A DNA stretch of 64,000 bases from Octopus sinensis. Taxonomy: Eukaryota. The stretch spans positions 177,568,001 through 177,632,000 of the forward strand of contig NC_042998.1 in NCBI RefSeq assembly GCF_006345805.1. The letters are read 5' to 3'. A model generated the notes under the pieces. That model did not search any database. It was not told the DNA's origin and saw only the letters and a list, made by a program, of their open reading frames with translations. The position numbers were made by a program, and so were the translations under genes. This document shows, one piece after another, positions 2,583 through 62,024 of the stretch (its first letter is position 1; every line of letters starts with the position of its first letter).

Positions 2583-2629
<47 letters not shown>

Positions 2630-11600: not shown

Positions 11601-11644
11601 GAAAACAACATGAACAGCAAGAACAACATGGACACACACACACA

Positions 11645-11709
<65 letters not shown>

Positions 11710-11988: not shown

Positions 11989-12035
<47 letters not shown>

Positions 12036-45000: not shown

Positions 45001-48000
45001 CATGCAGTGAGAATGAATCTGCAACCATGCGGCTGGAAAGCAAGCTTCTCACCACACAGCCATGCCTGTGCCTATTTTTTCTGCTTTTGTTTTTTTGGTA
45101 TTTTATTCCTGATATATTTAGTATCTAGTTGCCCCTTATACCAGCCATATCTTTCAAAATTTACAGCATAAAAAAAAAATACAAATTTGAAAATCTATTT
45201 GTAGTTACATTATGTCTGAAACCAAGATAAGCATAGAACACCTTTAACCATAGGACTGCTGGATCAGAGCTGATCTGGGATTAAACATTAACATATCTGT
45301 TGTGAATATATAGTAAGAAGCATTTATTGTGTGACTGTGTGCATTCAAACTCACACACTTGTTTGTAGTACAATAAAAAATTTAATAAAAACTTTTCTAC
45401 ATACACTTCACATCATCTCTTTATTTTTCATCTGCCTATGGTTTTAATATAGTGTTGCTCTCCTCTCCAACTTTTTAATGTACTTCCACTTATCATCTCC
45501 TCCTTCCTGACCCACATCTTTTTTCATTTATCTTACCCCAAACTGAGAATCACTACTGACCACATTGCCACCCATGTTCACCATTCACTGCATTTACCTC
45601 TGTTCTTATCTTAATTGTCTGTCACTCTTTCCACATTTTTACAAACCTACCCACCCAGTCATCCTTAATTCTGTCACTTTTCAAATTTTATCCACTTTCT
45701 TGTACCTTGAGAGTATGCCCTTTTCTTCATCCTTCCTCACTGAGATAGCCATGTATCCCCTCCACAGTGAGACACCTATTCCTGTCTCTATATCATACTT
45801 TAGCTTCTCAACACTTGGCACAAAGCCATCTCCCTCAATACTGTACTCCAGTCAACCAAAGAATCTTGTCTTGTTAATGACCTCACTAGTGCTGGTGCCC
45901 CCCCCCACCACCACCACCACCAAAGCACCTAGTACACTCTGTAAAGCATTTGGTATCAGGAAGGGCATCCAACCATAGAAACTTTGTCAAAGCAGACATT
46001 GGAGCCCAATTCATCCTTCTGACCCATCACAGCCTGCCAGACTATCTGTCCTATGTCTGCATGGAATATGAATGTTAAATGATGGTGATGATTCTACTTG
46101 GTAGAATCTGTTAAATCAGTTTTAGCAGATGTCCTTATCTACTGACTGGAAACTGCAATCAGGCTACAACTTCATTTTTGTGAATTTTTTTTTAACATTT
46201 TGTACCTGGCAAATTTTATGATAGAAAAACAAACAGTACTTCTAAAGTGAAGACAGATATAGCCTACAAAAGTAACACAGTAATATAATATGAGGGTTGC
46301 AAAAGGAGGAAGTGATGTTATATGATATTTAATATGTGGTTGTTATATTAAGTAATCTATCTTCTCTTATTACACTCAGCTTTTTACCATTCAATACAGT
46401 ACATAAAACTAGATAAACAAGTTGCATAAAAGGATGCACATTAGCTACCCTTTGGTGCTTGTATGTCTTACATGGACACATGACAAAACTTGTCAATAAA
46501 CAGTAAAAATAATCTATGTAGAGTCTGCTTTAAGGCAGACACTAGATGTAATTCACTGGCAGAATTGACATTTTAGAAAAACTAAGAAACACAACATATG
46601 AACAGTTTGGTTGTATTTCATAAAATGAAGAGCAAAATGACAATAATACTGTTAACAGAAAGGTCACTTAAGAGTTTATGTTAGCCGATTTTACTAACAT
46701 ACAAACAAATTATCTTCATTGGGATATTAAAAATAAAACAAACAACAAGCTTGTTAAGCTAAATGTTATATTTTCTTGAATAACAAAGTTCACATTTACT
46801 TGGCCAATCATTAACCTCTTATGGACCAAGTTGCTGTTAATGGAAAGAGGATGTCTAAGTAATTATGCCAGTCTAAATGGTGTAATCATGTGACTGACTA
46901 ATCTTGAAATATTGTGAAATACACAAAATTGAGTTGACAACAATATGCACAAACGTGTGTACAATTCAACATATATTGTATGAGATTGTGAAAAAATGTA
47001 GTTCAATAGAGGTGAACCAGATCTACAAGTATTCCAAAAATTATGAAATATAAAAACATTAATAACAACCAAGAAATGAGAAAATATGTAGCCTTGTAAC
47101 ATTTCCTTTCAGTTCAAGTTGAACACTCTAAACTCATTCGAAAGCTTACAAATAATCTGGTCTATGTCTTTCTCCTCTTGAACAATGATGAGAGAAGAAG
47201 GGAACAGAAACTTAACAGAAGAGCAGTGGGGAGTACGATAATTTTGCAAATCATTAAGATTTAAAAATACAAATAATGCAGACTTATTGCATAAATCACA
47301 ACATATAATTTCTTTTGTGTTGAGTTAATGAACTTCTAGGATTTCAGATGGAATGAGAGAAGCAAATACAAAAAGAGAAGTTACATTTTGAGACAGCTAA
47401 AATAATTCCTACAAAATAAATTTCAGGATGTTCTTGTTTTTATCTTTTAACATTTACAGCTTATTCCCGGCCTACTTTGCTCACTGCTATATTCTGTTTA
47501 TGAAAGAACATTTGAAAAATATGAAATGGGCAAACCTAGTCAAAATGAGATTTCAATTAACAGTAATGGATTTCAATTACTTTATGGTAGGGTAAATGAA
47601 AAAAAAGGACCATCAGAAAGTCTGAGATAATTACTGAATGGAATATAAAAAGTGAAATGTCTTTGATCAATGATAAGAACAAAGATGCACTGTCAACTGA
47701 CCAGAGAGAGGAAGGATAGTGTCAATTTAACCGAGGGAGAAAAGCTGTAGTTGTCAGTTCACCGATGGAGACTGACTGCAGTGTTAGTTTTTTCTTTTTT
47801 CATAGTGAGGTCCACAACATAGTGGTGAAAGGATTAGTGGATCTCAATGTGAACATTCTTTTCTTGATCTCTTGAAAGTAACTGAGTAATGAATTGCCTA
47901 GGAGATAGTGAGGGTGTGTGGAGAATAAGTAGTCAAGTACTTGGTTAACACTGACCCTAAAAAGATAAAAGGCAAAGTTGGACTCAGAGCACAGAGAGTT

Positions 48001-51000
48001 GGGACAAACACCAATTTGCTGCCTTAGAGAAACGTTATAATGCCAGTTAAGGCTGTAATGTCAACTGATCTGAGACAGACAAGCTGTAGCGCCAGTTGAC
48101 TTAAAAACAGTTGACCCACATAACAATGAATGCAGTCACCTACATTTTATTGTGATCCGATAAAAAGAGATCTATGAACTTCAAATAATAGAGTCTTTTG
48201 ATCCTTTTGAAACCAAACCGCCTGAAACTGCCCTTGGCTCTGTAGTATAAATAACTTGTTTTCAAAAGTCCTATACTAAAATCTTCCACCAAACCTTAGC
48301 CACAATTTATGTTCCTAACACTAGCTTCATGATAACTAAGTTATTTTACTAAATTCTTTGTTACGTCATCATCATCTTCGTTTAGCGTCCGCTTTCCATG
48401 CTTGCATGGATTGGACAGTTCAACTGGGGTCTGGGAAGCCAGAAGGCTGCACCAGGCCCAGTCTGATCTGGCAATGTTTCTACGGCTGGATGCCCTTCCT
48501 AACGCCAACCACTCCGTGAGTGTAGTGGGTGCTTTTTACGTGCCAGACGAGGCTGGCAAACGGCCACGATCGGATGGTGCTTTTTACGTGCCACTGGCAA
48601 TTTAAAGTTAATCGAAAGAAACAAAGAGTATCTCAACAGAAATATTGTAGCAAAAGGGTTAAACGGGATAGAAAATTCATTCATATATAGCTTTACTAAT
48701 GGTATTTAGATATGCTACAAAGAAAAATGTGCTAGAAATATAGACTAAATTCTTTCCTACAAAGATGATATCAGCTATTGCTGAATAATATATTAACATA
48801 TCTCAATAGGGATAATAATCATTATATATGCAATTACTTTGGTTTTCAAAGGATTTTGAAGTTATGGATAAAGTGATAGAAATAAAAATCTAGGCACATG
48901 TTAGGGATAGGAGTCAAATAATGGTATCAAATGGTTATTGCTATCAAAATTAGTGGATGCAAAAGTTTCAAATGTATAAAAATTATCTGCAATTTAGAAT
49001 CAAAACTCTAGATACTGATATCAAAATTTCTACTCAAGCCACACCACAGTGACTAATTATTACAGAAATCTAAAGAAAAGTGCACTAGCTATAAAGACAT
49101 AGTAGGTGTATGGTCATGACAGTCGTGATAGTGGATGGTGACTGTGCTGGTAGTATTGTATACTGGTACTTAAAGTGAAGATTATACTGAGGTATATGTT
49201 TTATGATAGTGTGTGTGATACACATATTCACAAATGAAGCCATTTATGGTAATCAAAGAAGTTATCAAAATCAGTGTGTCATAAACTTAATTCAGGATTC
49301 ATAACAAACTGTCTGTTTATTAGGATTGAGATCTAGATGATGTTATATACTAAGCTTAATGTAATCAACCAGTTACTGTTAATGAAAGGGCTTCATCAAA
49401 GTTGAAAATGTTGACACTTCAAGAAATAAATGAAAAGTGAATTTAAATGGGTTTTTTTTGGTGTTTTTTAGATGAGTAAATTGGCTCTTTTATCATTTAA
49501 TGACCATATATTTATAATGTTCATCTATACTGTACCTGATTATCTGATATATATATATATATATATATACACATCAGGTAATCAGGTACAGTATAGATGA
49601 ACACACAAAAATTCATTTAAGATAATAGTATATAACAAAATAATGGCAGGTAAGAAATAACAAAATGAAATAAAGCATTGCAAAACCAAGTTTTAAAATA
49701 TATCATGAAGAAATAAATACTGTAATGTAGAAATTTTAAAATACTTCAGTGAAAACATTTCTCACTAGGGGTCTAAATCTGGATAATAAAACAGTAGCAA
49801 CATCAATATCATAACATACAAGTTGTTATTGAGTAGGTATCTGAAGCAATACTAAAAACAGACTATATCACTACGATAAAAAAAAAGGACATAATAAAGT
49901 ATTGGTGATATAAACAAGAAGGAGTACTGAAGAAAGTGTTTGGAAGACGGATATATATACAACACATCTATCATGCAAAAATATCTAGTTTTCACAGACA
50001 ACTATATGGGTGTTCATACTACACTATTAGTATTGCACCCCAGCCTGGAACAGCAAGCATCTTCAAGAACGTTCTAAACTAAATGCTACTGTAGTTATGT
50101 TACTGAGATAAAAAGATGTAAAGACAAATTAGTTTACCAGAAACAATACAAATACACACATACCCACACAGTGATTATAATTTCTAATTATGCATTCTCA
50201 AGGTTGAAAAAAGAGGTAACTTTTAAAGATTGGTTTGATTAATCTTTTGACAACTTAATAAATAGAAACTTAAATTTTCAAGATATAGAGATGTAGTAAG
50301 AAGACAGAATATTTTCTAACTATTCCGCAAAATCCTTTGATAATAAAATCAGTTTCTTTAAGATAGTATATAACTAAATGACAAGTGCATTACTTGTTTG
50401 GCTATATTTTTACAGAGACTAGTGAGACAAAAAACTCAACAAAAAGCTGAATTAAACTTCTTAATGCTATATTTAAAGTCACAGCAATAAAAGATTATTG
50501 TGGCGTGATGTTGCAAACAAAAGTTTAGATAGGGCACTGTTCGTGTCTGCTGTAGGATAGATGGTGTATGATAGGCCAATATGGGTTAGGCAGGCCTAAC
50601 CACAATGACTGCAAGAGAAATTTTGCTCTGGGTTTGGTGCTGCTGTATTATGAATTTTTCTTCATTCTCCTTCTGTCTTTGAAGGAGAAAACAGCAAAAG
50701 ACATGTAGGCAGGCTTCATTGTGAGAGGTTGTACAACAATGGCAATGGTCAATATGACAAGAACCAAGAGATTTCTCTTAGAGAGTAGCAGTACCTATTC
50801 TTTGGTTCTTCCTATGTCATAGTAGTCAGTGGCAACTTAGCCAAACAGTACAATACTGAGTAGGCAATGATCTGCCATCCTGAAAATATGCCCTGACCAA
50901 CAAGGTCCTAATGCTAGTGATGTCTGCCTATTCCACAACTTCAATATTAGTAAAAAAAATGCCAATCTAGATACTGATGTCATGGTAGTACAACTGGATG

Positions 51001-54000
51001 TGATCAAGGAAGCACAAGTACTGACTGTAGGTAGCCCATCATTTGGAGCCATACAGCAAGGTAACTATATATGCCATCTTTGTCTTTCTTCCAGACTCTT
51101 TAGTACAGTTTGCTTAATGAGCTGTTTGCCTTTGTTTGTTGTCGACCTTTCTGTTTATCTTGATATTTGATGAACTGGTGCACCCTACGCAGCTGAACTG
51201 GTAGACTGTCTTCAGCTCTGACTCATCCATAGTGGGGAATATCTGTCTACCTCACTGTGAATTTCTGCCTGGAGAGCATGGTAGTCTTTGCAAAGCATGA
51301 TGTTTTACACTGCAGGGTTCAGTGTGAGAGCAACAAGGGCAGTACTATTGGTGAAGACTAGCTCTTGAATGAGTTTTTCTAGTGTCTTGGAGTAACTGCA
51401 GCTTCAGATTGAATAGACTACCATCAGTGCAGTATCAGATGTAGGAACTGTCTACTTCACCAAAGTTTTCCACAGTCCTTAAGTGCATCATACTGAAGGA
51501 GATGGTGAAGAGAGTCGGCATGAAAATGCCACCTTAATTTAAACATTCCCTGTTGGGAAAGGCTTTGTAAATATACTGTCCTGTCTGACTCGGGCCACAT
51601 TGATCCACATACATACAAGTTGGGTGATCTCTCTCATTCGTATATATGTATGTGTGCATGTGTATATATTGCATATATATAAAATTTCTACCGACAGAAA
51701 TCTTAGCCAATTGGATTATATTTAAAAAGCTTTTTGCATCAGAATTGAGAAGAGTACTAAATATATGTTCTATCTACATTACTAATTGATGTCTCAAATT
51801 ATACATGTTTCAGTAGGTAACTAAGTAGATTGATGAAATGTATATAATGGCAGCCAAGTACATTACTCACACACATATATATGAAGTGTCTTAAAGTGAA
51901 GAAAAGAAATCCCATCATGGGAGTTGGACCACCTTTCTATCACTTGCCAGTATACCACTGATTACACTAAATCAATCTTCCCAATCAAAATAACAAATAC
52001 ATACATCAATATACTGGATAAACAAACAGTCAAATCTCACTGAATACTACATGAGAATCTCAGGCAATTTAGCAGCTACTTAATCACCAGTAGACAAATC
52101 AATCCAACTAGTGTTAAAAAAAAACACAGTTCATATTTTAACTGTGTGTGGGTGTAGTGCTGGTCACTGTGATGAAACACATCCAGTACATTCTGTAAAG
52201 TGGTTTACAAAACAGGAGATAACGCTGAGTAGAGCAGATGCTTTAACTTTGCTGAGGATATAAAAACACATCTAATACTAGTGTTACGATCAACTTGTAA
52301 AGTGGTTTGTGTCAGGAACCCATGAAAACCAAGGTAAAAATGGATTCTATGAGCAAGATGTGGCCTCCAATGTATCTAGGAAAATATATAATAACTCTAA
52401 ATAAGAACTGACTTGGACCATAATGACCTATCTAACTGCAGCCATCATAGAAAATACTGATGATGATAATGATCAACATCATTCTGATTATATTTATCTA
52501 TCTATCCATGCATACACACATTCATATATATTCCTTTTAGGGTGGAAAATGTACCCTTGCATTTTCTGTCAACTGGTGAGCTGGTATTAAGACATTAAGT
52601 GAAGTCAGCTGAAATACTTAGGTGCCTGCATATGTGTGTCAGTTCCACTGTGTGACACCATGGGCAGGTGTTTTCTACTACAACCTTGGGCTGACCAAAG
52701 CCTTGTGAATGGATTTGGTAGATGGAAACTGAAAGAAGCCCGTCATATATATGTATTTGTGTGTCTGTGTTTGTCCACCCCATTATTGCTTGACCACCGA
52801 TGTTGGTGTGTTTATGTTCCCATAACTTAGTGGTTCGGCAACAGGGACTGATAGAATAAGTACTAGGTTTACAAAGAATAAGTTCTGGGGAAGATTTGTT
52901 TGACTAAAGGCGGTGTTCCAGCATGGCTGCAATCAAATGACTAACACAAGTAAAAGAATAAATATACACACACACATATATCAGTTACTTAACAACCAGT
53001 AGATAGGACACTCCAACTAGTGTTAATCCAATCTAGCATTTGAAATGTGACTTCACTGCTGCAAGCCTCCACCATCATTTTAAGTCCACTTTCTGTGCTA
53101 GCATGGGTTAGACAGTTTGACAGGGTCTGACAGGTCAGTGGATACTATCTAGCTCCAATGTGTTAGTTTTATCATGGTTTCTATGGCTGAATGCCAGTTG
53201 CTCTACAGAGTTCATTTTTTTATTTTGTGGTACCAGCACTGGTGAGGTCACCAGCAAGTCTTCACTATGTCAAGAGGAAGAATATATTATGCACTCATCT
53301 TCAATCAGCAGTACACAATCGATGACAATGGTTTATGTATAACATTTTGAACGATTCCTTTTAAAAGCCTTTGCACCTCTTTAAAAGTATATTTAAGTTA
53401 GCTTTGCCTCAATATTATGAGTTTTGATATATGAATGTAGTGTATTCATGGCAAGTAAATCTGAAACAATCCGGGGAGAATTTGAACTTAACACCAATGA
53501 AACACTCATCAGTTAAACAGTTCTACTTCTGCTTCCCACATTAAGTTGTATAATCACTTGGTATGTACATATAGCTACTTATTCATTTATAAGTGTTTTA
53601 GCAAAGTGCACAGCACTGGGAGCAGAAAAGCAAACAAACCTTTCAGCCAGTAAGCTGACATACTACCAAACTGGACACTGATTTTCAAATATGTGTACAC
53701 ACGTCTGCATCTGCATGCACATATGCATGTTTGTGTGCATGAAAGGTGCGTTATAAGTTTCTGATACATTCAAATCTATCTTTTCATTTAATACTAAGTA
53801 GCTAAACTATGATTAAGCTGTGAATATGTTATTTATGGGAGGATGTGTTATGTAAAAATCTCTTAATCAATCTGGGAAGATTAGACAAAATTATAATTAA
53901 ATTTTTTAACAGAAAGTGAAATTCTATACTATTCTCAAAAGGAAATCAAATACAATTTCCATCAAATTCAAAAGTTAATGCAAATGAGCTAATCTAGTTT

Positions 54001-54957
54001 GAAGATGAACTAATTAACCATAACATAAATGAAAAATTGAGACAATATCAATCAAGTGTTAGTAAATGAAACAAAATCTGTCATGCTTAGACCACCAACA
54101 TTGATTATAGCTGAGAAAATATCACTGACTAAAGAAACTAAAGCATAAGTTTATTCATGTTAAAAGTACTGGCAACAGAATGGAAAAATAGACAAGCAAG
54201 CACATAGTCATATTGATGAAATATTGTAATGTAGTAGAGAGGAAAAAAAAACCTGACACACAAGTATATGGATATGATGTTGAGCAACCATGGTGACAGG
54301 CAAGAGAATAATGTGAGGAGGATATTAAAAATAAATGATATTAATGATGAGAATGATAATAGCATATAAAAGGAAAGCAGGCAAGAATGAAAATATGAAT
54401 TTATATACAGATAGGGCATAACATAAAGAGAAAAAAAATAAAACATCAGCATGCTTGAAAGGAAATAATTTTATACGTACACATACATACACATAGACGG
54501 ATAGATGGATGGACATATAGACAGACAGACTGACAATTTATGAGCAGATAGCAATGGCAAAGACATGGTTGCAACCACTGGGTGTCCATGCCAAATTTTG
54601 AAACTCACCTGTACTTTGCTTTTAGTGGAATCATTATAGACCTTCTCTTCAAACTGTACAAATGGAGAAAAGCAGAAGGGCAAGCCCCAATTCAGAAAGG
54701 ACACACATTTAGAGATGATATCTTACACAGCCACTGCATACCTGCTATCTTTTGACATAGAGATGTAAACACATATGATTGCAGTGAATGGAAATGGCAG
54801 AGAAAGAAGAAAAGCAGTTGCAAATCAAGGAGCAGAGCAGACATAATGATAAATAATCTTCCTAAGTAAGTTGTAAGTTGTTGATTACATAAATAAATAA
54901 AGGTTTATGTTGCTTTCATGTCAACAGTCCCCTTAAAAGTATATGAGATTAATATAT

Positions 54958-54998
<41 letters not shown>

Positions 54999-57736
54999 GA
55001 AATGAGGTACTGCGAAATCCGGATGGGTTTATATTTACATTCATTCATTAGTATGTTACATGTTTTTATACATCATATATCATATATTAGCGCTTTCGTC
55101 CATTCTAGTGGAGTCTTCAAATTGTGTTCAATTTGAAGACTCCACATTTTAAAACAATGATGAAATACTCTGCCTAAAGACATTCATTTAATTAACACAA
55201 GACATTTGTTGTAAGTGAAGAGGTATATTAATTCTACATTTAGCACTAGTATATCACTGGATCTTATGAACCCTGGAGAAATAAAAAAGCAAATTTAATT
55301 CTGTGCAAGACTTAAACTTGGATTCAAGAAGGGGTACTGAGACATATTGTAAAGTATTAGGTTGACTCTGACAACTGTACCATAACAATCTCTTGGTTTA
55401 CATAATGACAAAAAGGTTTACTATGCTTTGGCATAAAACTCCCAAATCTGGTGCAAGGGTGGTAGCCAATATAATTAAACCCAAAATTCAACTCAGCCAT
55501 AAATATTTTACTAACCTAGATGGATGAAAGAAAATCCAACACCAGTGAGATATGAATTCAGGATGTAGAAAGATAAATCCACAAGATGTTTTATTTACAG
55601 ACTTCCAATTCAGCCATCCTACCCTGATATTAGCTAATTTCTGTATATCGTTTCCCATAATGAATTCTTCACTTTTCAATTTTTTCACAATAAATAAATT
55701 ATGAAGACACTGAGATGGCTTTTTTTTATAATTTAACAAAATATGGAATATTTAACTAGCTTTTCCAGAACATTTAAACATTTATGGTAAAATAAATTAT
55801 TGAAATAAATAGAAAAAAATATGGTTAATTTTCATGATATTAGATCAAAAACATTCAGAAGAAATTTTAATTTTGTTGAGGCATATTCTCTGGAGTATAT
55901 TCATAAACTAGATATTTCATTTGATATAACTGAAACAACCCCGATGACTACCTCAAGAGAAGTAAAGTGAAGATGCTCCTTTCATTTGGTTTCAAAGATG
56001 ATAGTTCATGCTTTTGTTATATGCAAGCATATGAAAGGCCAAAATTAATTTAAATTCATATATAAATAAACAAGGCAATTATTTTGAAAATACATTCATA
56101 ATTAGTATATGACAATGATGAAGCAGTATTTTGATAATGTTATTGGTGAGAACATTTTTGCTTCTTTTTGTCTCATATTTCAAAATAAAAACTAAACACA
56201 ACTATTTCTAGAAATACTAAGTAAAGAAAAATGTATAGTGAAAACATATGGTTACATGAAACACACAAAGGTGATATTTCTATGATGTATAGACATTTTA
56301 ACTTTTGCCAACAGTGGCAGTTTAATAAATTTCTTGATAACAAATTATGATTAAGTGAAAAATGGTAAAAGTTGAGATCTTTTACACACATTACATTGTT
56401 ATAATGAATATCATACTATGTTCTAAGTGTCCAAAAGTGTCCATTTTTTAAATAAACATTTTAAAATGGCCTCAGCTTTATTCATAAAAGCTTTATCAAC
56501 ATTGTCCATGACTACCAAGAAAATGGTACAGGCATGAATTTATATTTAATTCTTTATTGCCCTAAAGGGGCTAAACATAGAGGGGACAAACAAGGACAGG
56601 CAAAGAGACTGAGTTGATTACATCAACCCCAGTGCATAACAGGTACTTATTTAATCGACCCCAAAAGGATGAAAGGTAAAGTTGACGTCCATGGAATTTG
56701 AACTCAGAACGTAGCGGCCGATGAAATACCGCTAAGCATTTTGCTTGGTGTGCTAATGATTCTGCCAGCTCACTGCATGAATTTATATTACCGTCATCAA
56801 CATCATCATCATTAAATTTATTTATAAATTCAAGCTGTGTGTTCTCAACAGCATCATATTGCAATGGTGTGACATCTGAGATCTTAAGAAGTTTATATTC
56901 AAGATGATCAAATAATAAAATGCCACCTGCACCCACTGCCATAAGGTGATGCTAATGGAATGTCAAAGATCAAAATCTATTTAATTATAGGACTTATATA
57001 CATTATGAAGTAACCAAAGATGAGAGTATAAAATGAAAGTTTCCAAACAGGATAGACATTTTGGAGCTGTAAAAGTCAGATGAAAGTAGCTGGTAGCTTC
57101 ATTTTATTCCATGCTATTTTATATTCTACATGAAACAAACCATAGTTATTATATGAAGAATTCATATATAATTTATAAGATTACTGCTCATATATTCCTT
57201 CTACAAAGAAACTAGTAAATTAGTATCATAAATTGGTTGGGTTTTCAAAATGACACAAAAAGTAAGCTATTTGATAGAAATGTAAGAATTTTATATTGTA
57301 AAATGACTCAAACTTAATTTATAATCCACTTTCAGTAAAGGTCTATATTTGTATATTTTCATGATTTCCTTAGCCATTAAAGAAAAAGTAAAGTGTGTTG
57401 TCTTTTTAACTTAAGTAAAACTAGAACTGAAGAGAAAGTAGTGAATGGTTAGCAACTGACTGAAGGGCCTAGTCGCAATTAAGGTTATTAATTATGTGCC
57501 TATGCAAACTTTCCACTTAACAACTGTGTTAATGTTCACTTTTTTGTCTTTTAGTGTTTTATTGTTTACTGTGCATGTACTTTCATTGATATCTTTTTTT
57601 TCTTGACATATTTCTGCATCTGCCCCCCTTTTAACCTTTTCTGATGAGTTGTAGTGCAACTGGGCACTGTATACAATAAGCTCATTATTATTTATATTCA
57701 CCTCTCCCAAAACACTTTTAGTATTAATAGGTTGTC

Positions 57737-57771
<35 letters not shown>

Positions 57772-59216
57772 AACACATGTATGTATGTATGTATATATAC
57801 TCCCAAAAACTGAAAACAAAAACATAAATATTTAGCATCCAAAACAACAATAAACCAGAATCACTACACATAAGGCATTGCTAAAAATAGAATGTATTTA
57901 ATATATTTCATTTGAAAGAGTAGAATCAGAGTATACATATGAAATAAAATGACCATAATACTATAATATTAATGACTTAACTACATAGTATTTGCAGTGA
58001 AGCAGCAACAACCATTATAAGTATTAGCTTATGAAAATCAAAATCAAATACATGTATACATAGATTAGTGAATAAAACATTGAACACACAAAATATATAT
58101 ACAAAAACAGAATCAGTTATATAGGTGATTAATTCAAGCACCATATCTGGATTACACAGAAATGATTTAAACTATTATATACAATGAAATGAATATAACA
58201 TATCTAAAATAAGTGAAATATGTATTATTGGGTGAAATGATTTTAATGTTACACACTGATCACTTTTTTTGTTTGCTTAGTCTACATATTATATTATTGC
58301 AAACTAGTCAAGAAAATACTGAGGTTTTGATTTTGAAATAAGTTTATATACATATATATACATACATACATACGTACGTACAGCAATAAGAAAATGGAGG
58401 GGATGAAAAGGAGGTATTCATCAACCTTTAGACATTATATTATGCATATTTATTTATTAAAAAAAAAAGAATTATAATGTACATACATGTATGACATATT
58501 ATGTTTTACATATATAAAAATATCAGTAAATGCAGAACATAGAAAGTAGAATATTCTACATTCTATGTTCCACATTATATATTTTAATAATTACTGGTTT
58601 TTTATATATGTAAAGCATAATGTTATACATGTATGCACGTTATTATAATTGTTTTTTTTTAATAAATAAATAGACATAATATAATATCTAAAAGTTGATG
58701 AGTACCACCTCTTGATCCCCTCCATTTTCTTATTGCTGTATAAATTAAGGGTAAAACAACTTTTTACCCACACCCATTTATTACATTCAGTAGTGTAATT
58801 GCTATGCAATGAAAAAACACTTGTGTATTAATAATTGGGTATCTACCAGCAATATATCGGATAGATATTATCCCTTAGTTGGTTGGATTCACAACCTCTA
58901 ACTCTCTTGGAATTATATATATACACACACACACACACACAATATATATATATAAAAATTAAAGAAAAACCACTATTATGTAATTCAAACAAATATATAT
59001 ATATATTCATTTTTTTTGTATTTTTTGTCATCTAGTTACATGTTTTATAATATATTTTAATTTTTTCTTTATGATTTGGTTTATGTCTATCATTGTTTGA
59101 ATTACATAATAGTGGTTTTTCTCTAATTTATATATATTATATATTTATATTGTGAAATTTGATTTAATACTAAACTGAATTTTCCCTGTAAGTTTGGAGT
59201 TATACTCCCTAATATT

Positions 59217-59263
<47 letters not shown>

Positions 59264-62024
59264 ACATACACATGTATGTTCAGAGTGATATATTATCCCG
59301 GCAAATACCATGGTAGCTCTCAGTTATGTTCCAGGCTATGGCTAGCTACAAAGGAAATAAATTTTGAGGATGTACCAGTCTCTGTATTCTCTATCATTAT
59401 AATTGTTGCATATATTCAAATATATATACAAGTGTACACACACATACGCGCGCACGAAATTCTGAATTTTCAACATGTTTTATACCTTGCAAAGGTAATT
59501 ATTTGTTTTTGCTTTTCAAGGTATTTTCCTTCTGATTTTCAGTGCTTTTTTTTTTTCCTGTTTTTAAAATTTGTTTCTTCCTCAAAAATAAGGGTATTGC
59601 TAAACTCTAGTGGATTGTAAATATAAAAGAAAGGTCCTTGAAATAAAATCAAAAGAAATAGAAATAAAAATAATATTTGTAAATGAAGGAAACCAATTAA
59701 TACATACTCGTTTTGTGAGAGGGACCTCTACTGGCACTGGTACAACACCAGCAAGAATGCATCCATAAAAAGCACAGCTGAATGAGATGGGATCATTGTT
59801 GGGATACACAAGTGCAACCTAAAAGAATTTAGAAAACATGAAAGATTATGAAATGTTGCTACAATGTAAGAAGAGAGTATCAATTGTGATTCTGATGAAA
59901 TTCATTATAAGTCTTATATTAGTAGAGGTAATGAATGGGAAATTATAAAAATATTGATTTACTTTCCACTATTGGAAGATGTTTAGAATGTATCTGATTG
60001 ACATAACAGTTAACTCTTCACAAATGAAATATATAATGTTTGAATATCAAACTTGAAATAAATAACAAATCCTTCCATCATAATATATATTTTCAGATGT
60101 TTAGAGGCTGAAAAAAAAAAAAGAAGACTTCAGTGATGAATTGGTTTAGATACCAATATTATAAAGCCCCTTGGTACCAAATGCCATATTTAGTGTCATG
60201 GTGACAGTATCACTGGCATCTTTATGACTATTTATCATTACAGCACCAACAAAGAATTGCTCTGATAACTTAGGTGACACAATTCAGAGGGGATGGTTTA
60301 GCCTAGACAGAAAATGGCAGAGATAACTTTTTGCAAACCCACACGCCCCAAATAATGGCTGACTTTGATAACTTAGATGATACAGTGAAAAAGGAACACT
60401 TTAGACCTAGCAGACAGCACAAGATGTCATGTCCATTTATCATGACACCCCCACACCAAGAAATAGTCTAGTGGGGGGACACTTTAGTCTTGAGAGCCAA
60501 GATCTTTAGTGTTCATGGCAATGTGGAATGCACCCAGTCAAAAATGAAGGAAATGAAGAGATGTGGATGCTGCATGCAGGCAACTTGTTTTGGAGAGCAG
60601 TTATTCCAAATAACTGATACAAGGTAAAAGTTCAATCAGGGAAACCTTAATTAGACCAGTGATATAATAAAAGGCACCCAGTACACATTGTAATGTGGGT
60701 GGTAGTAAGAGAGTATCCATCTGTAGAAATTGTACCAAAAACTGGGATGTATGAATAAGACATGCAGTCTACCTAAAAAGACAGTAACTCTAATTAATTA
60801 AAAACTGAAATAGTGTAGAAGCTAATTCCTCTAGTGATGGTGGAATAGTTGAAAAGTGTTGTGGAGAGGGGGAAAAATGATGTTACCACAAAATTATTTG
60901 AAATAGCTACAAACAGTAAAACATGCTCACTCTATCACCGCTTTTGATTCCGATTTCTCCACTCTTTTGACCAACTTTGTTCAATAAATTGTAGGCTATT
61001 TTATAAGTTCTGCTTAATAGTTTTCCTGTAAAAATTGAAATAAATTATATGAAACTTACATAAACAGAGAAAATTATTACAAAATTTTTAAGAGATTGAA
61101 AGTACAATGTACTTTCATTTTAATTAACTAAAATCATTTTTCAAACTGAATCAATTCATCAGACAGAGTAACATGCAATAAGAATACGAAAACATAAAAA
61201 TACAAGGATTAAAATTTGCATCACTAGCAAATTGTTTGTGAAATTCATCAAGAAAATGCTTTAATTTCAATTAATTATTCCAAGTTCCAATCAAAAATTA
61301 AAAGCTGAAAAGTCAAATGATTTAAACACATTATCTCATAGTATTCCTTTCATTCAACCTCCTACTGCCCTCCTATTGTACCACTCCTTTATACATTGGT
61401 GCAGTGAGCTTTTTACTTTTGATTTAAGTCTTTTTTACTTTACTTCTCTTCATACAAAAGAACTGTATTTCCTCAAGCTATGATGAAGGCAACGTATCTA
61501 GAAGAATGGATTTCCAAAAGTGGAGCTCACTATTAATTGCTGGCAGTATGATAAACAAAAGATCTGTTTACTTCAAGCCAAATAGAAACAATTGTTAAAC
61601 AAATGGCAATAAGTAGGTACAGCTCTGTAGCAAGTTAGTCACAGACAATGGTGATTATATTTTCCAGTTCAATCCTCTTTGTTTGCTAATAATCAACATC
61701 ACTGCAAAGGTGCATAAATATTTACAGGAAACTTCAGAGATGAGAAAAACAAAGCTAAAAACAATAATGGTTCAGTTATTAACAATTAACCAAACATGGT
61801 AACTTTAAATGTTAATAACACCAATTGCCACAAGAATAAATTTAGATTAGCTACAATGCAAACAATAAAGATCTTCAATATCTAAATTTTTAATTCTTAC
61901 CATAAGTCAAATTATATGTGGGCTTGCCATTTTGGTCAAGTACTGTAATTGCATTGGCCTTATAAGTAGATGAACCATATCTCTGAACAGCAGCTTCTAA
62001 ACTCTTTGGTAAACCCGAAGGAAT
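2099..62024 (-). CDS. DIP2: Disco-interacting protein 2 homolog, spliced CDS (32 exons in window; N-terminal exons lie beyond 64000); tandem FAAL-like/AMP-binding domains
   Basis: 32 exons joined by hand with GT-AG sites and matching phases give 3738 nt with no internal stop. DIP2-type motifs include [65 protein letters not shown] and the terminal [12 protein letters not shown]. Confidence 0.97.
4900..5045 (+). mobile_element. Truncated SINE-like repeat with (GAT)n tail
   Basis: gatgagggttccagttgatc...gaaattaatgtgcaag resembles a recalled cephalopod SINE body; ends atgatgatgatgatga. Confidence 0.5.
5272..5395 (-). CDS. DIP2: DIP2 window-exon 31: (E)[40 protein letters not shown](C)
   Basis: ccgcag|AG, TG|gtatgt, 124 nt. 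Confidence 0.96.
6757..6905. repeat. Copy 1 of a ~150-nt local direct duplication
   Basis: Differs from 8120-8270 by 2 substitutions and 4 single-base indels (by-eye alignment). Confidence 0.9.
8120..8270. repeat. Copy 2 of the ~150-nt local direct duplication
   Basis: See copy 1 at 6757-6905. Confidence 0.9.
10060..10620 (-). mobile_element. RTE-clade LINE 3' fragment (degenerate RT C-terminus)
   Basis: Minus translation [44 protein letters not shown] resembles RTE/Expander [20 protein letters not shown]; contains stops. Confidence 0.8.
11630..12090. repeat. Compound (TA)n/(CA)n microsatellite with recurring ATAGATGCAT sub-unit
   Basis: Seen directly; source of several spurious YI-rich ORFs. 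Confidence 0.95.
14489..14663 (-). CDS. DIP2: DIP2 window-exon 30: [58 protein letters not shown](E)
   Basis: ttgcag|ATT, G|gtaaga, 175 nt. Confidence 0.96.
14791..14865 (-). CDS. DIP2: DIP2 window-exon 29: [25 protein letters not shown]
   Basis: ttctag|CTT, GAG|gtaaga, 75 nt. Confidence 0.95.
15541..15660 (-). CDS. DIP2: DIP2 window-exon 28: [40 protein letters not shown]
   Basis: ttacag|GGT, AAG|gtaccc, 120 nt. Confidence 0.96.
16307..16477 (-). CDS. DIP2: DIP2 window-exon 27: [57 protein letters not shown]
   Basis: tttcag|GCC, CAG|gtagga, 171 nt. Confidence 0.96.
16638..16714 (-). CDS. DIP2: DIP2 window-exon 26: (T)[25 protein letters not shown]
   Basis: ttctag|CT, AAA|gtaagt, 77 nt. 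Confidence 0.95.
17747..17838 (-). CDS. DIP2: DIP2 window-exon 25: (S)[30 protein letters not shown](T)
   Basis: ttccag|C, A|gtaaga, 92 nt. Confidence 0.95.
18180..18310 (-). CDS. DIP2: DIP2 window-exon 24: [43 protein letters not shown](S)
   Basis: tattag|ATG, AG|gtaagt, 131 nt. Confidence 0.96.
18713..18874 (-). CDS. DIP2: DIP2 window-exon 23: [54 protein letters not shown]
   Basis: taacag|GAA, AAG|gtaaga, 162 nt; P-loop-like motif of the second domain. Confidence 0.96.
19210..19349 (-). CDS. DIP2: DIP2 window-exon 22: (G)[46 protein letters not shown]
   Basis: ttccag|GT, AAA|gtaagt, 140 nt. Confidence 0.95.
19690..20185 (-). mobile_element. Cluster of degraded tRNA-derived SINE fragments
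   Basis: Motifs ggatgaaagcaaagttgac, gatttgaactc and ctaatgattctgcca match the better-preserved SINE at 41981-42207. Confidence 0.6.
20428..20469 (-). CDS. DIP2: DIP2 window-exon 21 (42 nt): (G)[13 protein letters not shown](G)
   Basis: aaatag|GG, G|gtaagt; matches DIP2 GIDLIAAFYGCLY.G. Confidence 0.93.
20617..20740 (-). CDS. DIP2: DIP2 window-exon 20: [41 protein letters not shown](G)
   Basis: ttctag|GTG, G|gtaagg, 124 nt. Confidence 0.95.
21394..21474 (-). CDS. DIP2: DIP2 window-exon 19: [27 protein letters not shown]
   Basis: tcacag|CAT, AAG|gtacaa, 81 nt. Confidence 0.94.
21665..22030 (-). mobile_element. RTE-LINE 3' tail copy with (GAT)n end and internal ~60-nt sub-repeats
   Basis: catcatc..gtttaatgtc..ttccatgctagcatgggttgg...ctggatgcccttcctaac..ccaaccactcc shared with at least 8 other copies in the window. 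Confidence 0.8.
22405..22478 (+). mobile_element. Short RTE 3' tail copy, opposite orientation to its neighbours
   Basis: gtccaacccatgccagcatggaaaatggacattaaatgatgaagaagacgat. Confidence 0.7.
23040..23604 (-). mobile_element. 5'-truncated RTE LINE (end of ORF2 plus 3' UTR)
   Basis: Same tail family; 23490-23604 is the reverse complement of the ORF2-end sequence seen at 28600-28750. Confidence 0.8.
23654..23835 (-). mobile_element. RTE 3' tail copy
   Basis: ttccatgctggcatggg...caaccactccaagagtgtagtgggtgctttttacatgcc. Confidence 0.7.
24605..24717 (-). CDS. DIP2: DIP2 window-exon 18: (D)[37 protein letters not shown] (inter-domain linker)
   Basis: ttgcag|AT, AAG|gtaaat, 113 nt. Confidence 0.93.
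26445..26577 (-). CDS. DIP2: DIP2 window-exon 17: [44 protein letters not shown](D)
   Basis: ttttag|ACC, G|gtgaga, 133 nt. Confidence 0.95.
27113..27211 (-). CDS. DIP2: DIP2 window-exon 16: [33 protein letters not shown]
   Basis: tcacag|AGT, AAG|gtaaat, 99 nt. Confidence 0.95.
28268..28352 (-). CDS. DIP2: DIP2 window-exon 15: (R)[28 protein letters not shown]
   Basis: ttctag|A, GAA|gtaagc, 85 nt. Confidence 0.95.
28593..28992 (+). mobile_element. 5'-truncated RTE LINE: ORF2 C-terminus, 3' UTR and (GAT)n tail
   Basis: Plus frame [30 protein letters not shown] resembles the RTE G.RGRGRPRKTW..VVK.DL end; followed by ggcattaggaagggcattc and an atgatgatg tail. Confidence 0.8.
29231..29358 (-). 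CDS. DIP2: DIP2 window-exon 14: [42 protein letters not shown](R)
   Basis: tttcag|GGG, AG|gtaaat, 128 nt. Confidence 0.95.
30096..30176 (-). CDS. DIP2: DIP2 window-exon 13: [27 protein letters not shown]
   Basis: ttgtag|GTT, CCC|gtaagt, 81 nt; RTGLLGF motif. Confidence 0.95.
30941..31077 (-). CDS. DIP2: DIP2 window-exon 12: (A)[45 protein letters not shown]
   Basis: cctgcag|CT, CAG|gtgagg, 137 nt. Confidence 0.95.
31518..32706 (+). mobile_element. Decayed Tc1/mariner transposon, probably DD37D (maT)-like
   Basis: Transposase motifs WFFYDEK (WFFSDEK), KFPATV and [14 protein letters not shown] (WPPSSPDLNPLDY); ORF-track 31757..32017 HTH-like [11 protein letters not shown]; degenerate TIR pair tcagtttttttgaggacat / atgacctcaaaaaagtga; frameshifts and stops. 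Confidence 0.8.
33227..33366 (-). CDS. DIP2: DIP2 window-exon 11: (R)[46 protein letters not shown](A)
   Basis: ttgtag|A, G|gtaagt, 140 nt. Confidence 0.95.
33603..33717 (-). CDS. DIP2: DIP2 window-exon 10: (W)[37 protein letters not shown](R)
   Basis: ccaaaag|GG, AG|gtaagc, 115 nt. Confidence 0.94.
34082..35244 (+). mobile_element. Decayed mariner transposon with internal deletion
   Basis: Motifs [15 protein letters not shown] (WVPRELT), [20 protein letters not shown] and LEHPAY; degenerate TIRs tacaaggggaagtaaaaaatt / aattttttactcttcttcata with TA ends. Confidence 0.88.
35954..36193 (-). mobile_element. Possible Penelope-like RT relic
   Basis: Minus ORF contains [15 protein letters not shown], resembling the Penelope KIHK...RPIVS motif; single weak motif only. 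Confidence 0.3.
36493..36612 (-). CDS. DIP2: DIP2 window-exon 9: (A)[39 protein letters not shown](W)
   Basis: tttcag|CT, T|gtaagc, 120 nt. Confidence 0.95.
37247..37340 (-). CDS. DIP2: DIP2 window-exon 8: [31 protein letters not shown](A)
   Basis: ttccag|AGT, G|gtattt, 94 nt. Confidence 0.95.
37572..37636 (-). CDS. DIP2: DIP2 window-exon 7: (G)[21 protein letters not shown]
   Basis: ttatag|GA, TGT|gtaagt, 65 nt. Confidence 0.95.
37745..37921 (+). mobile_element. RTE 3' tail copy
   Basis: gcattaggaagggcatc...tccaacccatgcc...aaatgatgatgatga. Confidence 0.7.
39413..39515 (-). CDS. DIP2: DIP2 window-exon 6: [34 protein letters not shown](G)
   Basis: tttcag|TAT, G|gtaata, 103 nt; P-loop-like motif of the first adenylation-like domain. 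Confidence 0.95.
40822..41690 (+). mobile_element. Ty3/gypsy LTR-retrotransposon pol relic (RNase H through start of integrase)
   Basis: Plus translation [48 protein letters not shown] resembles HY.P.LP..VA.DAS..G.G..PIAHASK.L...QNYSQIEKEGLAIIF; then [12 protein letters not shown] and [12 protein letters not shown] (resembling integrase IDYAGPF); no LTRs seen. Confidence 0.75.
41981..42207 (-). mobile_element. Near-intact tRNA-derived SINE
   Basis: A-box-like TGGCAGAATCGTTAG, B-box GGTTCAAATTCC and body gtcgactttgcctttcatcctttcggggtcgataaattaagtaccag; flanks share a short tcatta. Confidence 0.88.
42442..42545 (-). CDS. DIP2: DIP2 window-exon 5: (G)[34 protein letters not shown]
   Basis: tttctag|GA, GAA|gtgagt, 104 nt. 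Confidence 0.95.
42806..42929 (-). CDS. DIP2: DIP2 window-exon 4: [41 protein letters not shown](G)
   Basis: tttcag|GAT, G|gtaaga, 124 nt. Confidence 0.95.
43342..43514. mobile_element. piggyBac-like MITE
   Basis: ttaa-ccccttaacattt at the left and aaatgttaaaggg-tttga at the right: terminal inverted repeat with a TTAA-type flank. Confidence 0.6.
43745..43870 (+). mobile_element. Fragment of a second SINE family
   Basis: ggcaccttgggcaaatgccttctact matches 52640-52961. Confidence 0.6.
44820..45072 (-). mobile_element. Second SINE family, partial copy
   Basis: Reverse complement of the 52640-52961 family (tagtagaagacacttgcccaag). Confidence 0.7.
45920..46092 (+). mobile_element. RTE 3' tail copy
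   Basis: ggtatcaggaagggcatccaaccatagaaac...gttaaatgatggtgatga. Confidence 0.7.
48198..48662. mobile_element. piggyBac-like MITE interrupted by an RTE tail (48366-48600)
   Basis: Left ttga-tccttttgaaac and right gtagcaaaaggg-ttaa form a degenerate TIR pair; AT-rich body resumes after the insert. Confidence 0.6.
48366..48600 (-). mobile_element. Well-preserved RTE 3' tail copy
   Basis: catcatcatcttcgtttagcgtccgctttccatgc...ctggatgcccttcctaacgccaaccactcc. Confidence 0.8.
49518..49603. repeat. 31-bp inverted repeat around a (TA)n spacer
   Basis: Arms 49518-49548 and 49573-49603 are reverse complements with one mismatch. Confidence 0.92.
50500..51620 (-). mobile_element. RTE-BovB-like LINE fragment (RT plus C-terminus)
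   Basis: Minus translation [20 protein letters not shown] resembles WSGHLVRM.D.RLPKIVLYG; PTLFTI.FSMM near 51500; C-terminal F.CSHCG-like remnant; multiple stops and deletions. Confidence 0.85.
52640..52961 (+). mobile_element. Second SINE family, long copy
   Basis: caccatgggcaggtgttttctact...ggatttggtagatggaaactgaaagaagcccgtc...gaataagtactagg...caagtaaaagaataa tail. Confidence 0.78.
53070..53270 (-). mobile_element. Degraded RTE 3' tail copy
   Basis: catcattttaagtccactttctgtgctagcatgggttagacagtttgac. Confidence 0.6.
54609..54653 (-). CDS. Candidate DIP2 cassette exon, 45 nt: [15 protein letters not shown]
   Basis: cccttctgcttttctccatttgtacag| acceptor and CAG|gtgagt donor; stop-free, phase 0/0 like its host intron. 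Confidence 0.6.
55088..55145 (-). other. Degenerate minimal hammerhead-ribozyme core fused to a 17-bp perfect palindrome
   Basis: Minus strand reads TTGAAGA-CTCC-actagaat-GGAC-GAAA-GCGC-TA; palindrome arms at 55108-55124 and 55129-55145. Confidence 0.5.
56547..56774 (-). mobile_element. tRNA-derived SINE with 15-bp target-site duplication
   Basis: Same family as 41981-42207; gcatgaatttatatt at both 56532-56546 and 56775-56789. Confidence 0.9.
58529..58576. repeat. Imperfect 48-nt palindrome
   Basis: gaacatagaa-a-gtagaatattctac-a-ttctatgttc with outer aatg/catt pair. Confidence 0.8.
59708..59818 (-). CDS. DIP2: DIP2 window-exon 3: [37 protein letters not shown]
   Basis: ttttag|GTT, CGA|gtatgt, 111 nt; lies within ORF-track 59600..59809. 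Confidence 0.95.
60931..61025 (-). CDS. DIP2: DIP2 window-exon 2: (G)[31 protein letters not shown]
   Basis: tttacag|GA acceptor, AGA|gtgagc donor, 95 nt, phase 1 to 0. Confidence 0.93.
61901..62024 (-). CDS. DIP2: DIP2 window-exon 1: [41 protein letters not shown](G)
   Basis: ttacag|ATT acceptor, G|gtaaga donor, 124 nt; resembles DIP2 SLEAALQRWG...GKP.Y.LTYG. Confidence 0.93.

What the first reader, a model, noticed from the sequence alone, without database searches (positions are those of the whole stretch)
54609..54653. Frame-preserving 45-nt cassette exon candidate inserting [15 protein letters not shown] into the first FAAL-like domain of DIP2
It has a strong acceptor (cccttctgcttttctccatttgtacag), a consensus donor (CAG|GTGAGT), no stop and phase 0/0 matching the 16.8-kb intron between ...PLTKR and DAGGLG.... 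The DIP2 orthologues I recall join these segments directly (PLTRK-DAG), so this would be a lineage-specific insert. The flanks look regulatory: a UGC in the pyrimidine tract, a YGCY-rich stretch ~150-200 nt upstream (MBNL-type) and GCAUG about 15 nt downstream of the donor (Rbfox-type). DIP2 is known to act in neurite patterning and diacylglycerol homeostasis, so a tissue-specific isoform is plausible (inference).
Basis: partly seen in the sequence, partly recalled or inferred. Interest (0 to 1): 0.7.

Follow-up and report, generated by a model that had tools for sequence, protein, structure and literature searches.

The report
Annotated DIP2 cassette exon in octopus
The 45-base segment is a real alternative exon of the octopus DIP2 gene, but it is already in the public RefSeq gene models and is shared with cuttlefish, so it is a correct call rather than a discovery.

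Summary
Window 54653..54609 (minus strand) reads [15 protein letters not shown]. It is bounded by ...tttgtacag| and CAG|gtgagt, has no stop, and sits in phase 0/0 inside a 16,778-nt DIP2 intron.

It is a genuine cassette exon and it is already annotated. RefSeq Octopus sinensis DIP2 isoform X8 (XP_029658229.1) carries exactly this insert. Its residues 352-1632 map onto the window through 33 unique GT-AG junctions.

Among the models I could read, O. sinensis and O. bimaculoides each have isoforms with and without the exon. Cuttlefish (Sepia pharaonis annotation plus RNA-seq assemblies from four runs) carry the orthologue [15 protein letters not shown]: 12/15 residues and 37/45 bases identical. 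Some cuttlefish transcripts add a second 30-nt insert that I did not find in octopus.

The exon DNA is single-copy in the genome. In a predicted structure the insert is a low-confidence coil between the strand at VPVPV and the next helix of FAAL-like domain 1.

The GCAUG and YGCY motifs are present, but neither their function nor tissue specificity could be tested.

One addition: other animal lineages carry unrelated inserts at this same junction, so the site is a recurrent splicing hot spot.

The parts
2102..62024 (-). Part of the DIP2 gene held by the window: coding exons for residues 352-1632 of RefSeq isoform X8, including the stop codon region
   Evidence: Exact peptide mapping of P0001. 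All 33 junctions resolve to a single GT-AG solution that reproduces the protein. Pfam finds DMAP_binding, two AMP-binding stretches and AMP-dom_DIP2-like.
59708..59818 (-). Upstream constitutive exon (111 nt), [10 protein letters not shown]...PVEVPLTKR, ending in phase 0; donor CGA|gtatgt
54654..54680 (-). 3' splice site region of the cassette: cccttctgcttttctccatttgtacag, with a UGC in the pyrimidine tract. The acceptor scores 29th of 33 in this gene.
54609..54653 (-). The 45-nt cassette exon, [15 protein letters not shown], phase 0/0
   Evidence: Identical insert in XP_029658229.1 and other octopus RefSeq isoforms. Single-copy in the genome. 37/45 nt identical to the cuttlefish exon.
54603..54608 (-). 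5' splice site gtgagt (CAG|GTGAGT). The donor scores 6th of 33 in this gene.
54587..54591 (-). GCAUG at +18 from the donor (context GGCAUGG). Candidate Rbfox-type element, function untested.
54450..54454 (-). Second GCAUG at +155 (context AGCAUGC), function untested
54796..54839 (-). Cluster of four YGCY motifs 146-186 nt upstream of the acceptor. Candidate MBNL-type element, function untested.
42806..42929 (-). Downstream constitutive exon (124 nt), [42 protein letters not shown]..., starting in phase 0

Best explanation
The segment is a genuine, already annotated alternative cassette exon of the Octopus sinensis DIP2 gene.

Shown:
- The spliceosome can join exon ...PLTKR (59708) to 54653 and 54609 to DAGG... 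(42929). It can also skip the 45 nt.
- This gives two protein forms that differ by 15 hydrophilic residues.
- The exon is conserved in sequence, position and phase between octopuses and cuttlefish. It therefore predates the split between the octopus and the cuttlefish-squid lineages.

Inferred:
- Its splice-site make-up (a near-perfect donor with one of the weakest acceptors in the gene) is that of an exon whose inclusion depends on auxiliary factors.
- In the protein, the insert lengthens the loop between the strand at VPVPV and the following helix in the N-terminal part of FAAL-like domain 1. From the ANL-motif literature, recalled from memory, I read that strand as the A2 motif. FAAL-like domain 1 is the domain shown in yeast to need its adenylation residues (PMC9342972).
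- The insert is predicted to be an unstructured loop, and only FEEKV-ND--K-KVQ is conserved.
- The most likely effect is therefore to change a surface feature, such as partner binding, inter-domain packing or membrane approach, rather than the fold or the adenylation chemistry.
For: - Exact insert in the O. sinensis isoform X8 protein, with 100% identity over the 94-residue junction region.
- Among the isoforms I could read, O. sinensis X8/X12/X13/X14 include it and X4/X6 skip it. O. bimaculoides X3/X5/X8/X13/X15 include it and X6/X10/X11/X16 skip it.
- The whole X8 model from residue 352 maps to the window with unique GT-AG junctions.
- RNA-seq-assembled cuttlefish mRNAs from four runs carry the orthologous exon. 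Three are 99.7-100% identical to each other in nucleotides, and one of them (P0142) matches a Sepia pharaonis protein at 100%.
- Cassette identity between octopus and cuttlefish is 37/45 nt. It has 4 of 15 codons changed synonymously, against 19/37 and 24/39 in the flanking exons.
- The exon is single-copy in the 2.7-Gb genome, so it does not belong to a repeat family.
- It is the only strict candidate in the intron.
- Donor rank is 6/33 and acceptor rank is 29/33.
- In the AlphaFold model (mean pLDDT 72, pTM 0.71), residues 115-135, which contain the insert, have pLDDT below 50 and are coil. They lie between strand 106-110 and helix 134-145, whose 10-residue blocks average pLDDT 91 and 86.
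- The model matches solved FAALs, with a target-normalised TM-score of 0.84 to 7r7g. The sequence profile also matches FAALs.
Against: - I could reach no read-level data. The octopus evidence consists of RefSeq 'X' models, which are computational.
- Searches for short and mid-length octopus transcript fragments found none.
- Only 15 of the 33 members of the octopus isoform cluster could be read.
- Inclusion levels and tissue pattern are unknown.
- The 'flexible surface loop' reading rests on low model confidence, not on coordinates or experiment.
- The protein-level effect is inference.
- At the residue level the cassette is less conserved (80%) than DIP2 as a whole (95%). That would also fit a nearly neutral spacer.
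Confidence: 0.88

Rival explanations
1. Chance pseudo-exon: an open 45-nt stretch that happens to sit between an AG and a GTGAGT in a long AT-rich intron and is never really spliced in.
For: Such candidates arise by chance at about 0.145 per intron of this size and composition. The local RNA fold is unremarkable, z = -1.07.
Against: The exact insert is in RefSeq isoforms of two octopus species. An orthologous exon with the same length, phase and position, and 82% nucleotide identity, is in cuttlefish mRNA assemblies from four independent runs.
Confidence: 0.02
2. Real exon but not meaningfully alternative. Either it is effectively constitutive and the skipped models are minor noise, or inclusion is low-level noise with no selected function.
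For: All ten cuttlefish RNA-seq-assembled proteins seen (P0002, P0142-P0148 and their loci) include the cassette. The only cuttlefish form without it is one genome-annotation model, P0140. No quantitative data were available.
Against: Skipped isoforms are modelled independently in O. sinensis, O. bimaculoides and S. pharaonis. The weak acceptor (29/33) and the reduced synonymous change are typical of regulated alternative exons. Frame and length are kept across the octopus-cuttlefish split.
Confidence: 0.1
3. One reading: a nervous-system-specific exon switched on by Rbfox-type binding to the downstream GCAUG, by MBNL-type binding to the upstream YGCY cluster, or by an Srrm-type factor acting through the UGC next to the acceptor.
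For: GCAUG lies at +18 and +155, four YGCY lie at -186 to -146, and UGC lies at about -21. The genome holds one match to the SRRM_C domain above Pfam's cut-off. In octopus, alternative splicing is highest in neural tissues (PMC9699675). DIP2 acts in neurite maintenance (PMC11100700).
Against: Motif enrichment is modest and was chosen after the fact: 3.6% and 0.56% of background windows do as well. Neither GCAUG is UGCAUG. Motif conservation could not be tested, because the cuttlefish gene spans 160 kb and no DNA was returned. At 45 nt the exon is longer than classic 3-27-nt neural microexons. The search for the Fox-1_C domain was uninformative. There are no tissue data.
Confidence: 0.3

Closest known systems
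RefSeq models of the same gene: O. sinensis DIP2 isoform X8 (XP_029658229.1) and X12-X14; O. bimaculoides X3 (XP_014768816.1), X5, X8, X13, X15
   Same: The very same exon, with an identical 15-residue insert at the same junction. Sister isoforms skip it.
   Different: Nothing differs. The finding rediscovers an annotated feature. The models are computational, and I found no paper that discusses this exon.
Cuttlefish DIP2 isoforms (Sepia/Acanthosepion pharaonis CAE13057xx and RNA-seq assemblies)
   Same: An orthologous 45-nt phase-0/0 cassette at the same junction: [15 protein letters not shown] (FEEKVVNDPAKGKVQ in a related sepiid). 12/15 residues and 37/45 nt are identical.
   Different: Three residues differ (S>P, T>A, S>G), so the octopus Ser/Thr are not conserved. 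Some cuttlefish transcripts add a second 30-nt insert, TEGATSRGGM, directly after it. No counterpart flanked by AG...GT was found in the octopus intron.
Bilaterian neural microexons (Srrm/eMIC-dependent programme) and Rbfox-regulated exons
   Same: Small, frame-preserving, and inserted in a surface loop of a folded domain of a gene with neuronal roles. UGC lies near the acceptor and GCAUG lies downstream.
   Different: 45 nt exceeds the 3-27-nt class. Neural specificity and factor dependence are untested here.
Recurrent ('convergent') tissue-specific exons at the same position of orthologous genes (bioRxiv 10.64898/2026.09.05.749416)
   Same: The PLT(K/R)(K/R)|DAG junction of DIP2 carries unrelated inserts in several lineages:
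- gastropods, 5 aa;
- bivalves, 8-10 aa;
- sturgeons and paddlefish, 12 aa;
- sharks, 25 aa;
- squamates, 26 aa;
- some teleosts, 4-7 aa.
This is the pattern that paper calls a hot spot.
   Different: DIP2 is not mentioned in that paper's main text. My sample is biased towards insert-bearing proteins, and I did not check tissue specificity in any lineage. At least the gastropod VGVAH insert comes from an alternative donor 15 nt downstream, not from a cassette.
FAAL-specific insertion of bacterial fatty acyl-AMP ligases
   Same: Both are extra segments in the N-terminal part of a FAAL-type fold.
   Different: By established knowledge, the FAAL-specific insertion is a constitutive structured element near the hinge that blocks the CoA-ligating conformation. 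The cassette is an optional, apparently unstructured 15-residue loop right after the strand at VPVPV (A2 motif by my reading), far earlier in the sequence.

Membership tests
Alternative cassette exon (frame-preserving) | Bounded by a functional AG acceptor and GT donor inside an intron of a known gene | tested here: met
   tttgtacag|TTT...CAG|gtgagt. The junctions reproduce the RefSeq protein uniquely.
Alternative cassette exon (frame-preserving) | Length a multiple of 3, no in-frame stop, and the same phase on both sides | tested here: met
   45 nt, 15 codons, phase 0/0.
Alternative cassette exon (frame-preserving) | Both inclusion and skipping products exist | tested here: met
   Met at the level of gene models. 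Plus and minus isoforms exist in O. sinensis, O. bimaculoides and S. pharaonis. Read counts were not available.
Alternative cassette exon (frame-preserving) | Conservation of the exon in related species | tested here: met
   Identical in O. bimaculoides. 37/45 nt and 12/15 aa identical in cuttlefish transcripts.
Neural microexon programme (Srrm/eMIC type) | Length 3-27 nt | tested here: not met
   The exon is 45 nt.
Neural microexon programme (Srrm/eMIC type) | UGC motif just upstream of the acceptor | tested here: met
   cttcUGCuuuu at about -21. The motif is present, but its function is untested.
Neural microexon programme (Srrm/eMIC type) | Inclusion restricted to neurons and dependent on the factor | not testable with these tools
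   No RNA-seq read data. The genome has one SRRM_C match, which shows only that a candidate factor exists.
Rbfox-regulated exon | (U)GCAUG within about 200 nt downstream, conserved in orthologous introns | tested here: inconclusive
   GCAUG lies at +18 and +155, and neither is UGCAUG. Conservation is untestable because orthologous intron DNA could not be fetched.
DIP2 protein family (host gene) | DMAP1-binding domain followed by two tandem FAAL-like adenylate-forming domains | tested here: met
   Pfam finds DMAP_binding, AMP-binding in two stretches, and AMP-dom_DIP2-like. The domain-1 profile hits solved FAALs. The model matches 7r7g with a target-normalised TM-score of 0.84.
Exonised transposable element | The exon sequence belongs to a dispersed repeat family | tested here: not met
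   In the whole-genome search, only the simple-repeat stretch about 75-140 nt downstream of the donor matches elsewhere. The exon itself is unique.

The most novel reading that the evidence does not exclude
The phase-0 junction PLT(K/R)(K/R)|DAG, just after the VPVPV strand (A2 motif by my reading) of DIP2's catalytically required first FAAL-like domain, may be a bilaterian-wide hot spot. Unrelated alternative inserts would have evolved there repeatedly, in coleoids, gastropods, bivalves, sturgeons, sharks, squamates and teleosts. The coleoid 45-nt exon would be a neural, factor-regulated member that tunes DIP2's surface interactions in neurons.
Probability: 0.25. Interest if true: 0.45.

Novelty: already known. 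Interest (0 to 1): 0.2.

Why it matters
As a scan result, it shows that a reader working from sequence alone can call a real 45-nt alternative exon inside a 16.8-kb intron.

Biologically it adds little. The exon is already in RefSeq for this genome, for O. bimaculoides and for cuttlefish.

The modest added value has three parts:
- It places the insert on the protein, as an unstructured loop right after the VPVPV strand of the adenylation-competent domain.
- It shows that the exon dates back at least to the common ancestor of octopuses and cuttlefish.
- It notes that the same junction carries unrelated inserts in many other animals.

If those inserts prove to be tissue-regulated, DIP2 would be a clean case for studying how recurrent small exons tune a lipid-metabolic and neurite-maintenance protein.

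Tried and rejected
1. Looked for octopus transcript fragments carrying the junction, using a 94-aa and a 329-aa query. No cephalopod fragments were in the collection. These hits did, incidentally, reveal the gastropod alternative-donor origin of VGVAH.
2. Tried to fetch orthologous genomic DNA to test conservation of the intronic motifs. The O. bimaculoides and S. pharaonis isoforms were not on record. The longest S. pharaonis isoform was found, but the gene spans 160 kb and no DNA was returned.
3. Scanned the 11.7-kb downstream intron part for a counterpart of the cuttlefish second insert, TEGATSRGGM. The best BLOSUM matches (score 18) lack AG...GT flanks.
4. Tested the exonised-repeat idea and rejected it, because the exon is unique in the genome.
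5. The first structure run, with 19 aligned sequences, was too poor to use (pLDDT 51.7). It was replaced by a 75-sequence run.
6. A local RNA fold around the exon is not unusual, z = -1.07.
7. Literature searches for DIP2 microexons or splicing, and for the four SRA run numbers, found nothing relevant.
8. The Fox-1_C domain search in the genome was uninformative, because its controls also failed.
9. I considered a Tyr-based docking motif in the insert and dropped it. The Tyr is Val in the related sepiid, and the spacing does not fit pYxN.

Full report
**What is in the sequence**

Read on the minus strand, window 54653..54609 is TTTGAAGAGAAGGTCTATAATGATTCCACTAAAAGCAAAGTACAG, which translates to [15 protein letters not shown]. 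It is preceded by cccttctgcttttctccatttgtacag and followed by gtgagt.

The upstream exon ends ...PVEVPLTKR at 59708 with donor CGA|gtatgt. The downstream exon begins DAGGLGIG at 42929 after ...tcatttcag. The intron between them is 16,778 nt. The cassette divides it into parts of 5,054 and 11,679 nt.

**Is it more than chance?**

I used strict criteria: a YAG acceptor, at least 75% pyrimidines in the 20 nt before it, an open frame, a length that is a multiple of 3, and a GTRAGT donor. This is the only candidate in the intron. There are none on the antisense strand and only two on the whole minus strand of the window.

Order-1 Markov shuffles of the intron give 0.145 such candidates. Sequence alone is therefore suggestive, not decisive.

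I scored the splice sites against position weight matrices (PWMs) built from the gene's other sites. The donor ranks 6th of 33. The acceptor ranks 29th of 33, so 'strong acceptor' should be corrected to 'comparatively weak acceptor with a near-consensus donor'.

**Identity of the locus**

The window is contig 2, 177,568,001-177,632,000, of a 2.72-Gb assembly in 13,516 contigs.

A search with a spliced pseudo-protein, scored only over the 94 residues around the junction, returned as best hit 'disco-interacting protein 2 homolog C isoform X8 [Octopus sinensis]' (XP_029658229.1, 1632 aa). It was 100% identical over the whole region, insert included.

Residues 352-1632 of that protein map exon by exon to the window. 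All 33 junctions have exactly one GT-AG solution that reproduces the protein.

Pfam finds the DMAP1-binding domain, two AMP-binding stretches and the DIP2-type C-terminal AMP domain. The exon is therefore already part of the public annotation of this genome.

**Is it alternative?**

Fifteen of the 33 members of the octopus protein cluster could be read.
- O. sinensis X8, X12, X13 and X14 carry the insert. X4 and X6 join PLTKR directly to DAGG.
- O. bimaculoides X3, X5, X8, X13 and X15 carry the identical insert. X6, X10, X11 and X16 lack it.

The same models show at least four other alternative events in the gene. These are computational RefSeq models, and I could not reach read-level data.

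**Conservation**

A second cluster holds cuttlefish proteins.
- Seven Sepia (Acanthosepion) pharaonis annotation models: five have the cassette plus a second insert, one has the cassette only, and one has neither.
- Eight proteins from mRNA-length contigs assembled from public RNA-seq runs.

I fetched four of those contigs: L009 from SRR5319790, L010 from SRR25158144, L011 from SRR21372859 and L012 from SRR27666084. L009-L011 are 99.7-100% identical to each other in nucleotides. P0142, the product of L010 and L011, is 100% identical to an S. pharaonis protein over 1528 aa. L012 is 95.6% identical in nucleotides, so it comes from a related sepiid.

All carry a 45-nt insert at the same junction: [15 protein letters not shown], or FEEKVVNDPAKGKVQ in L012.

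Between octopus and cuttlefish the cassette is 37/45 nt and 12/15 aa identical. Four of 15 codons differ synonymously and three non-synonymously. The flanking exons are 89/111 and 86/117 nt identical, with 19/37 and 24/39 codons changed synonymously. Whole-protein identity is 95%.

So the cassette tolerates more amino-acid change than the rest of DIP2. It shows less silent change than its neighbours, which is common for regulated exons. The numbers are small.

The exon is therefore at least as old as the split between octopuses and cuttlefish. The exon DNA is single-copy in the genome; only a simple-repeat stretch in the downstream intron matches elsewhere. It does not belong to a dispersed repeat family.

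**A second cuttlefish insert**

L009 and L012 carry an extra 30 nt (TEGATSRGGM) directly after the cassette. L010 and L011, from the same species as L009, lack it. A BLOSUM scan of the octopus intron found no counterpart flanked by AG and GT.

**Where the insert sits in the protein**

A profile of FAAL-like domain 1 matches solved fatty acyl-AMP ligases: 7r7g at E = 4.6e-44, plus 3kxw, FadD32 and 3pbk. The junction falls between ...AGVVAVPAYPPRPNKS and FDRLHSIIQDA... in 7r7g. By my reading of the ANL-motif literature (from memory, not a tool result), this is the loop after the A2-motif strand.

The first AlphaFold run was poor. A second run with 75 aligned DIP2 sequences gave mean pLDDT 72 and pTM 0.71. 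In it, strand 106-110 (VPVPV) and helix 134-145 fall in 10-residue blocks averaging pLDDT 91 and 86. The 21 residues between them (115-135), which contain the cassette (118-132), are coil with pLDDT below 50.

The model superposes on solved FAALs, with a target-normalised TM-score of 0.84 to 7r7g.

I could not obtain coordinates. 'Surface loop away from the active site' therefore remains an inference. It rests on the model's confidence pattern and on my recollection that the A2 motif plays a structural rather than a catalytic role.

In yeast, the adenylation residues of domain 1, but not those of domain 2, are required for DIP2 function (PMC9342972). The insert thus sits in the domain that matters. 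Nothing suggests that it touches the chemistry.

**Regulatory motifs**

- UGC at about -21;
- four YGCY between -186 and -146, a count matched by 0.56% of 70-nt windows;
- GCAUG at +18 and +155, where 3.6% of 200-nt windows hold two or more. Neither is UGCAUG.

These figures are post hoc. Motif conservation could not be tested because no orthologous intron DNA was obtainable.

The genome has one match to the SRRM_C domain above Pfam's cut-off. The Fox-1_C search was uninformative. The local RNA fold is ordinary.

Octopus neural tissues have the highest alternative-splicing rates, but the species is not exceptional among invertebrates (PMC9699675). Tissue specificity of this exon remains untested.

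**The junction in other animals**

Because the query carried an insert, the top 120 hits were enriched for proteins with something at the same place.
- Gastropods have 5-residue inserts (VSDRH, NGTSN, VGVAH, SGSSN, GGGSN).
- Scallop has TVVVDESK and mussel has SNHTVVDHLW.
- Sturgeon and paddlefish DIP2C have RPTPAGEVRMIQ.
- Sharks and rays have a 25-residue insert, and squamates a 26-residue insert.
- Some teleosts have VRAQ, VTIHEM or VGEIINN.
- The arthropod, annelid and brachiopod proteins listed join the two exons directly, with one possible exception: an unnamed JGI protein (P0037) whose flanks resemble the annelid proteins carries VSSASW.

Two genomic open frames from unidentified sources read ...KR|VGVAH|VS..., the insert seen in the gastropods Babylonia and Littorina. 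That insert is therefore probably an alternative donor 15 nt downstream, not a cassette.

The sequence is coleoid-specific, but the site is used repeatedly. This fits the 'hot spot' pattern described for tissue-specific exons in a 2026 preprint, which does not mention DIP2 in its main text. I found no paper on DIP2 microexons or splicing.

**Verdict**

The finding is a correct identification of a real, coleoid-conserved, frame-preserving alternative exon of DIP2. It adds a 15-residue, probably unstructured loop after the VPVPV strand of FAAL-like domain 1.

It is already present in RefSeq, so its novelty is nil and its interest is low. The regulated or neural reading and the cross-phylum hot-spot idea remain open. 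Both can be tested with existing RNA-seq and genome data that these tools do not reach.

Noticed in passing
window 13017-13067 (minus strand): A second small cassette in the same gene: a 51-nt exon encoding [17 protein letters not shown] between ...TELTQSDG and ERHDAIF... in the second FAAL-like domain. It is present in most octopus isoforms, absent from O. bimaculoides X5, X10 and X16, and absent from a cuttlefish transcript-derived protein (P0142). Its donor, CAG|gttcac, is the weakest of the 33 in the window.
   Followed up: partly
window 24717-24729 (minus strand): Alternative acceptors 12 nt apart give [14 protein letters not shown] or REHHP-DVTPS. GSLA is present in O. sinensis X8 and X4 and absent in X6, O. 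bimaculoides X6 and X10. The 12-nt-downstream AG is inferred from the protein variants, not read from the DNA.
   Followed up: partly
L009 and L012 (cuttlefish mRNA contigs), directly after the cassette: A further 30-nt insert, ACGGAAGGTGCAACCAGCCGTGGTGGGATG = TEGATSRGGM, is present in some cuttlefish transcripts and absent in others of the same species (L010, L011). No AG...GT-flanked counterpart was found in the octopus intron 42930-54608.
   Followed up: yes
proteins P0004-P0094 (other animals), at the junction equivalent to window 59708|42929: Unrelated inserts occur at the very same exon junction in gastropods, bivalves, sturgeons and paddlefish, sharks, squamates and some teleosts. The VGVAH insert seen in gastropod proteins looks like an alternative donor 15 nt downstream: genomic open frames P0213 and P0224 read KR|VGVAH|VS.
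   Followed up: partly
window 34603-34803 (plus strand), inside a DIP2 intron: Remnant of a mariner-type transposase (Pfam Transposase_1, E = 8.3e-07). Neighbouring open frames at about 34393-35048 look like broken pieces of the same element.
   Followed up: partly
window 48336-48705, with copies at 21665-21843, 23061-23283, 23743-23790, 28801-28979, 37776-37920 and 45958-45997: A dispersed repeat of about 150-180 nt, 75-90% identical and present on both strands, occurs at least seven times in the DIP2 introns of this window. It is probably a SINE-like element and was not classified.
   Followed up: partly
G000:C11337:11167-11301 (minus strand): The only match in the genome to the SRRM_C domain (32.6 bits, above Pfam's cut-off). 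This is a candidate Srrm-type splicing-factor gene carrying the domain family that drives neural microexon inclusion in other animals.
   Followed up: no
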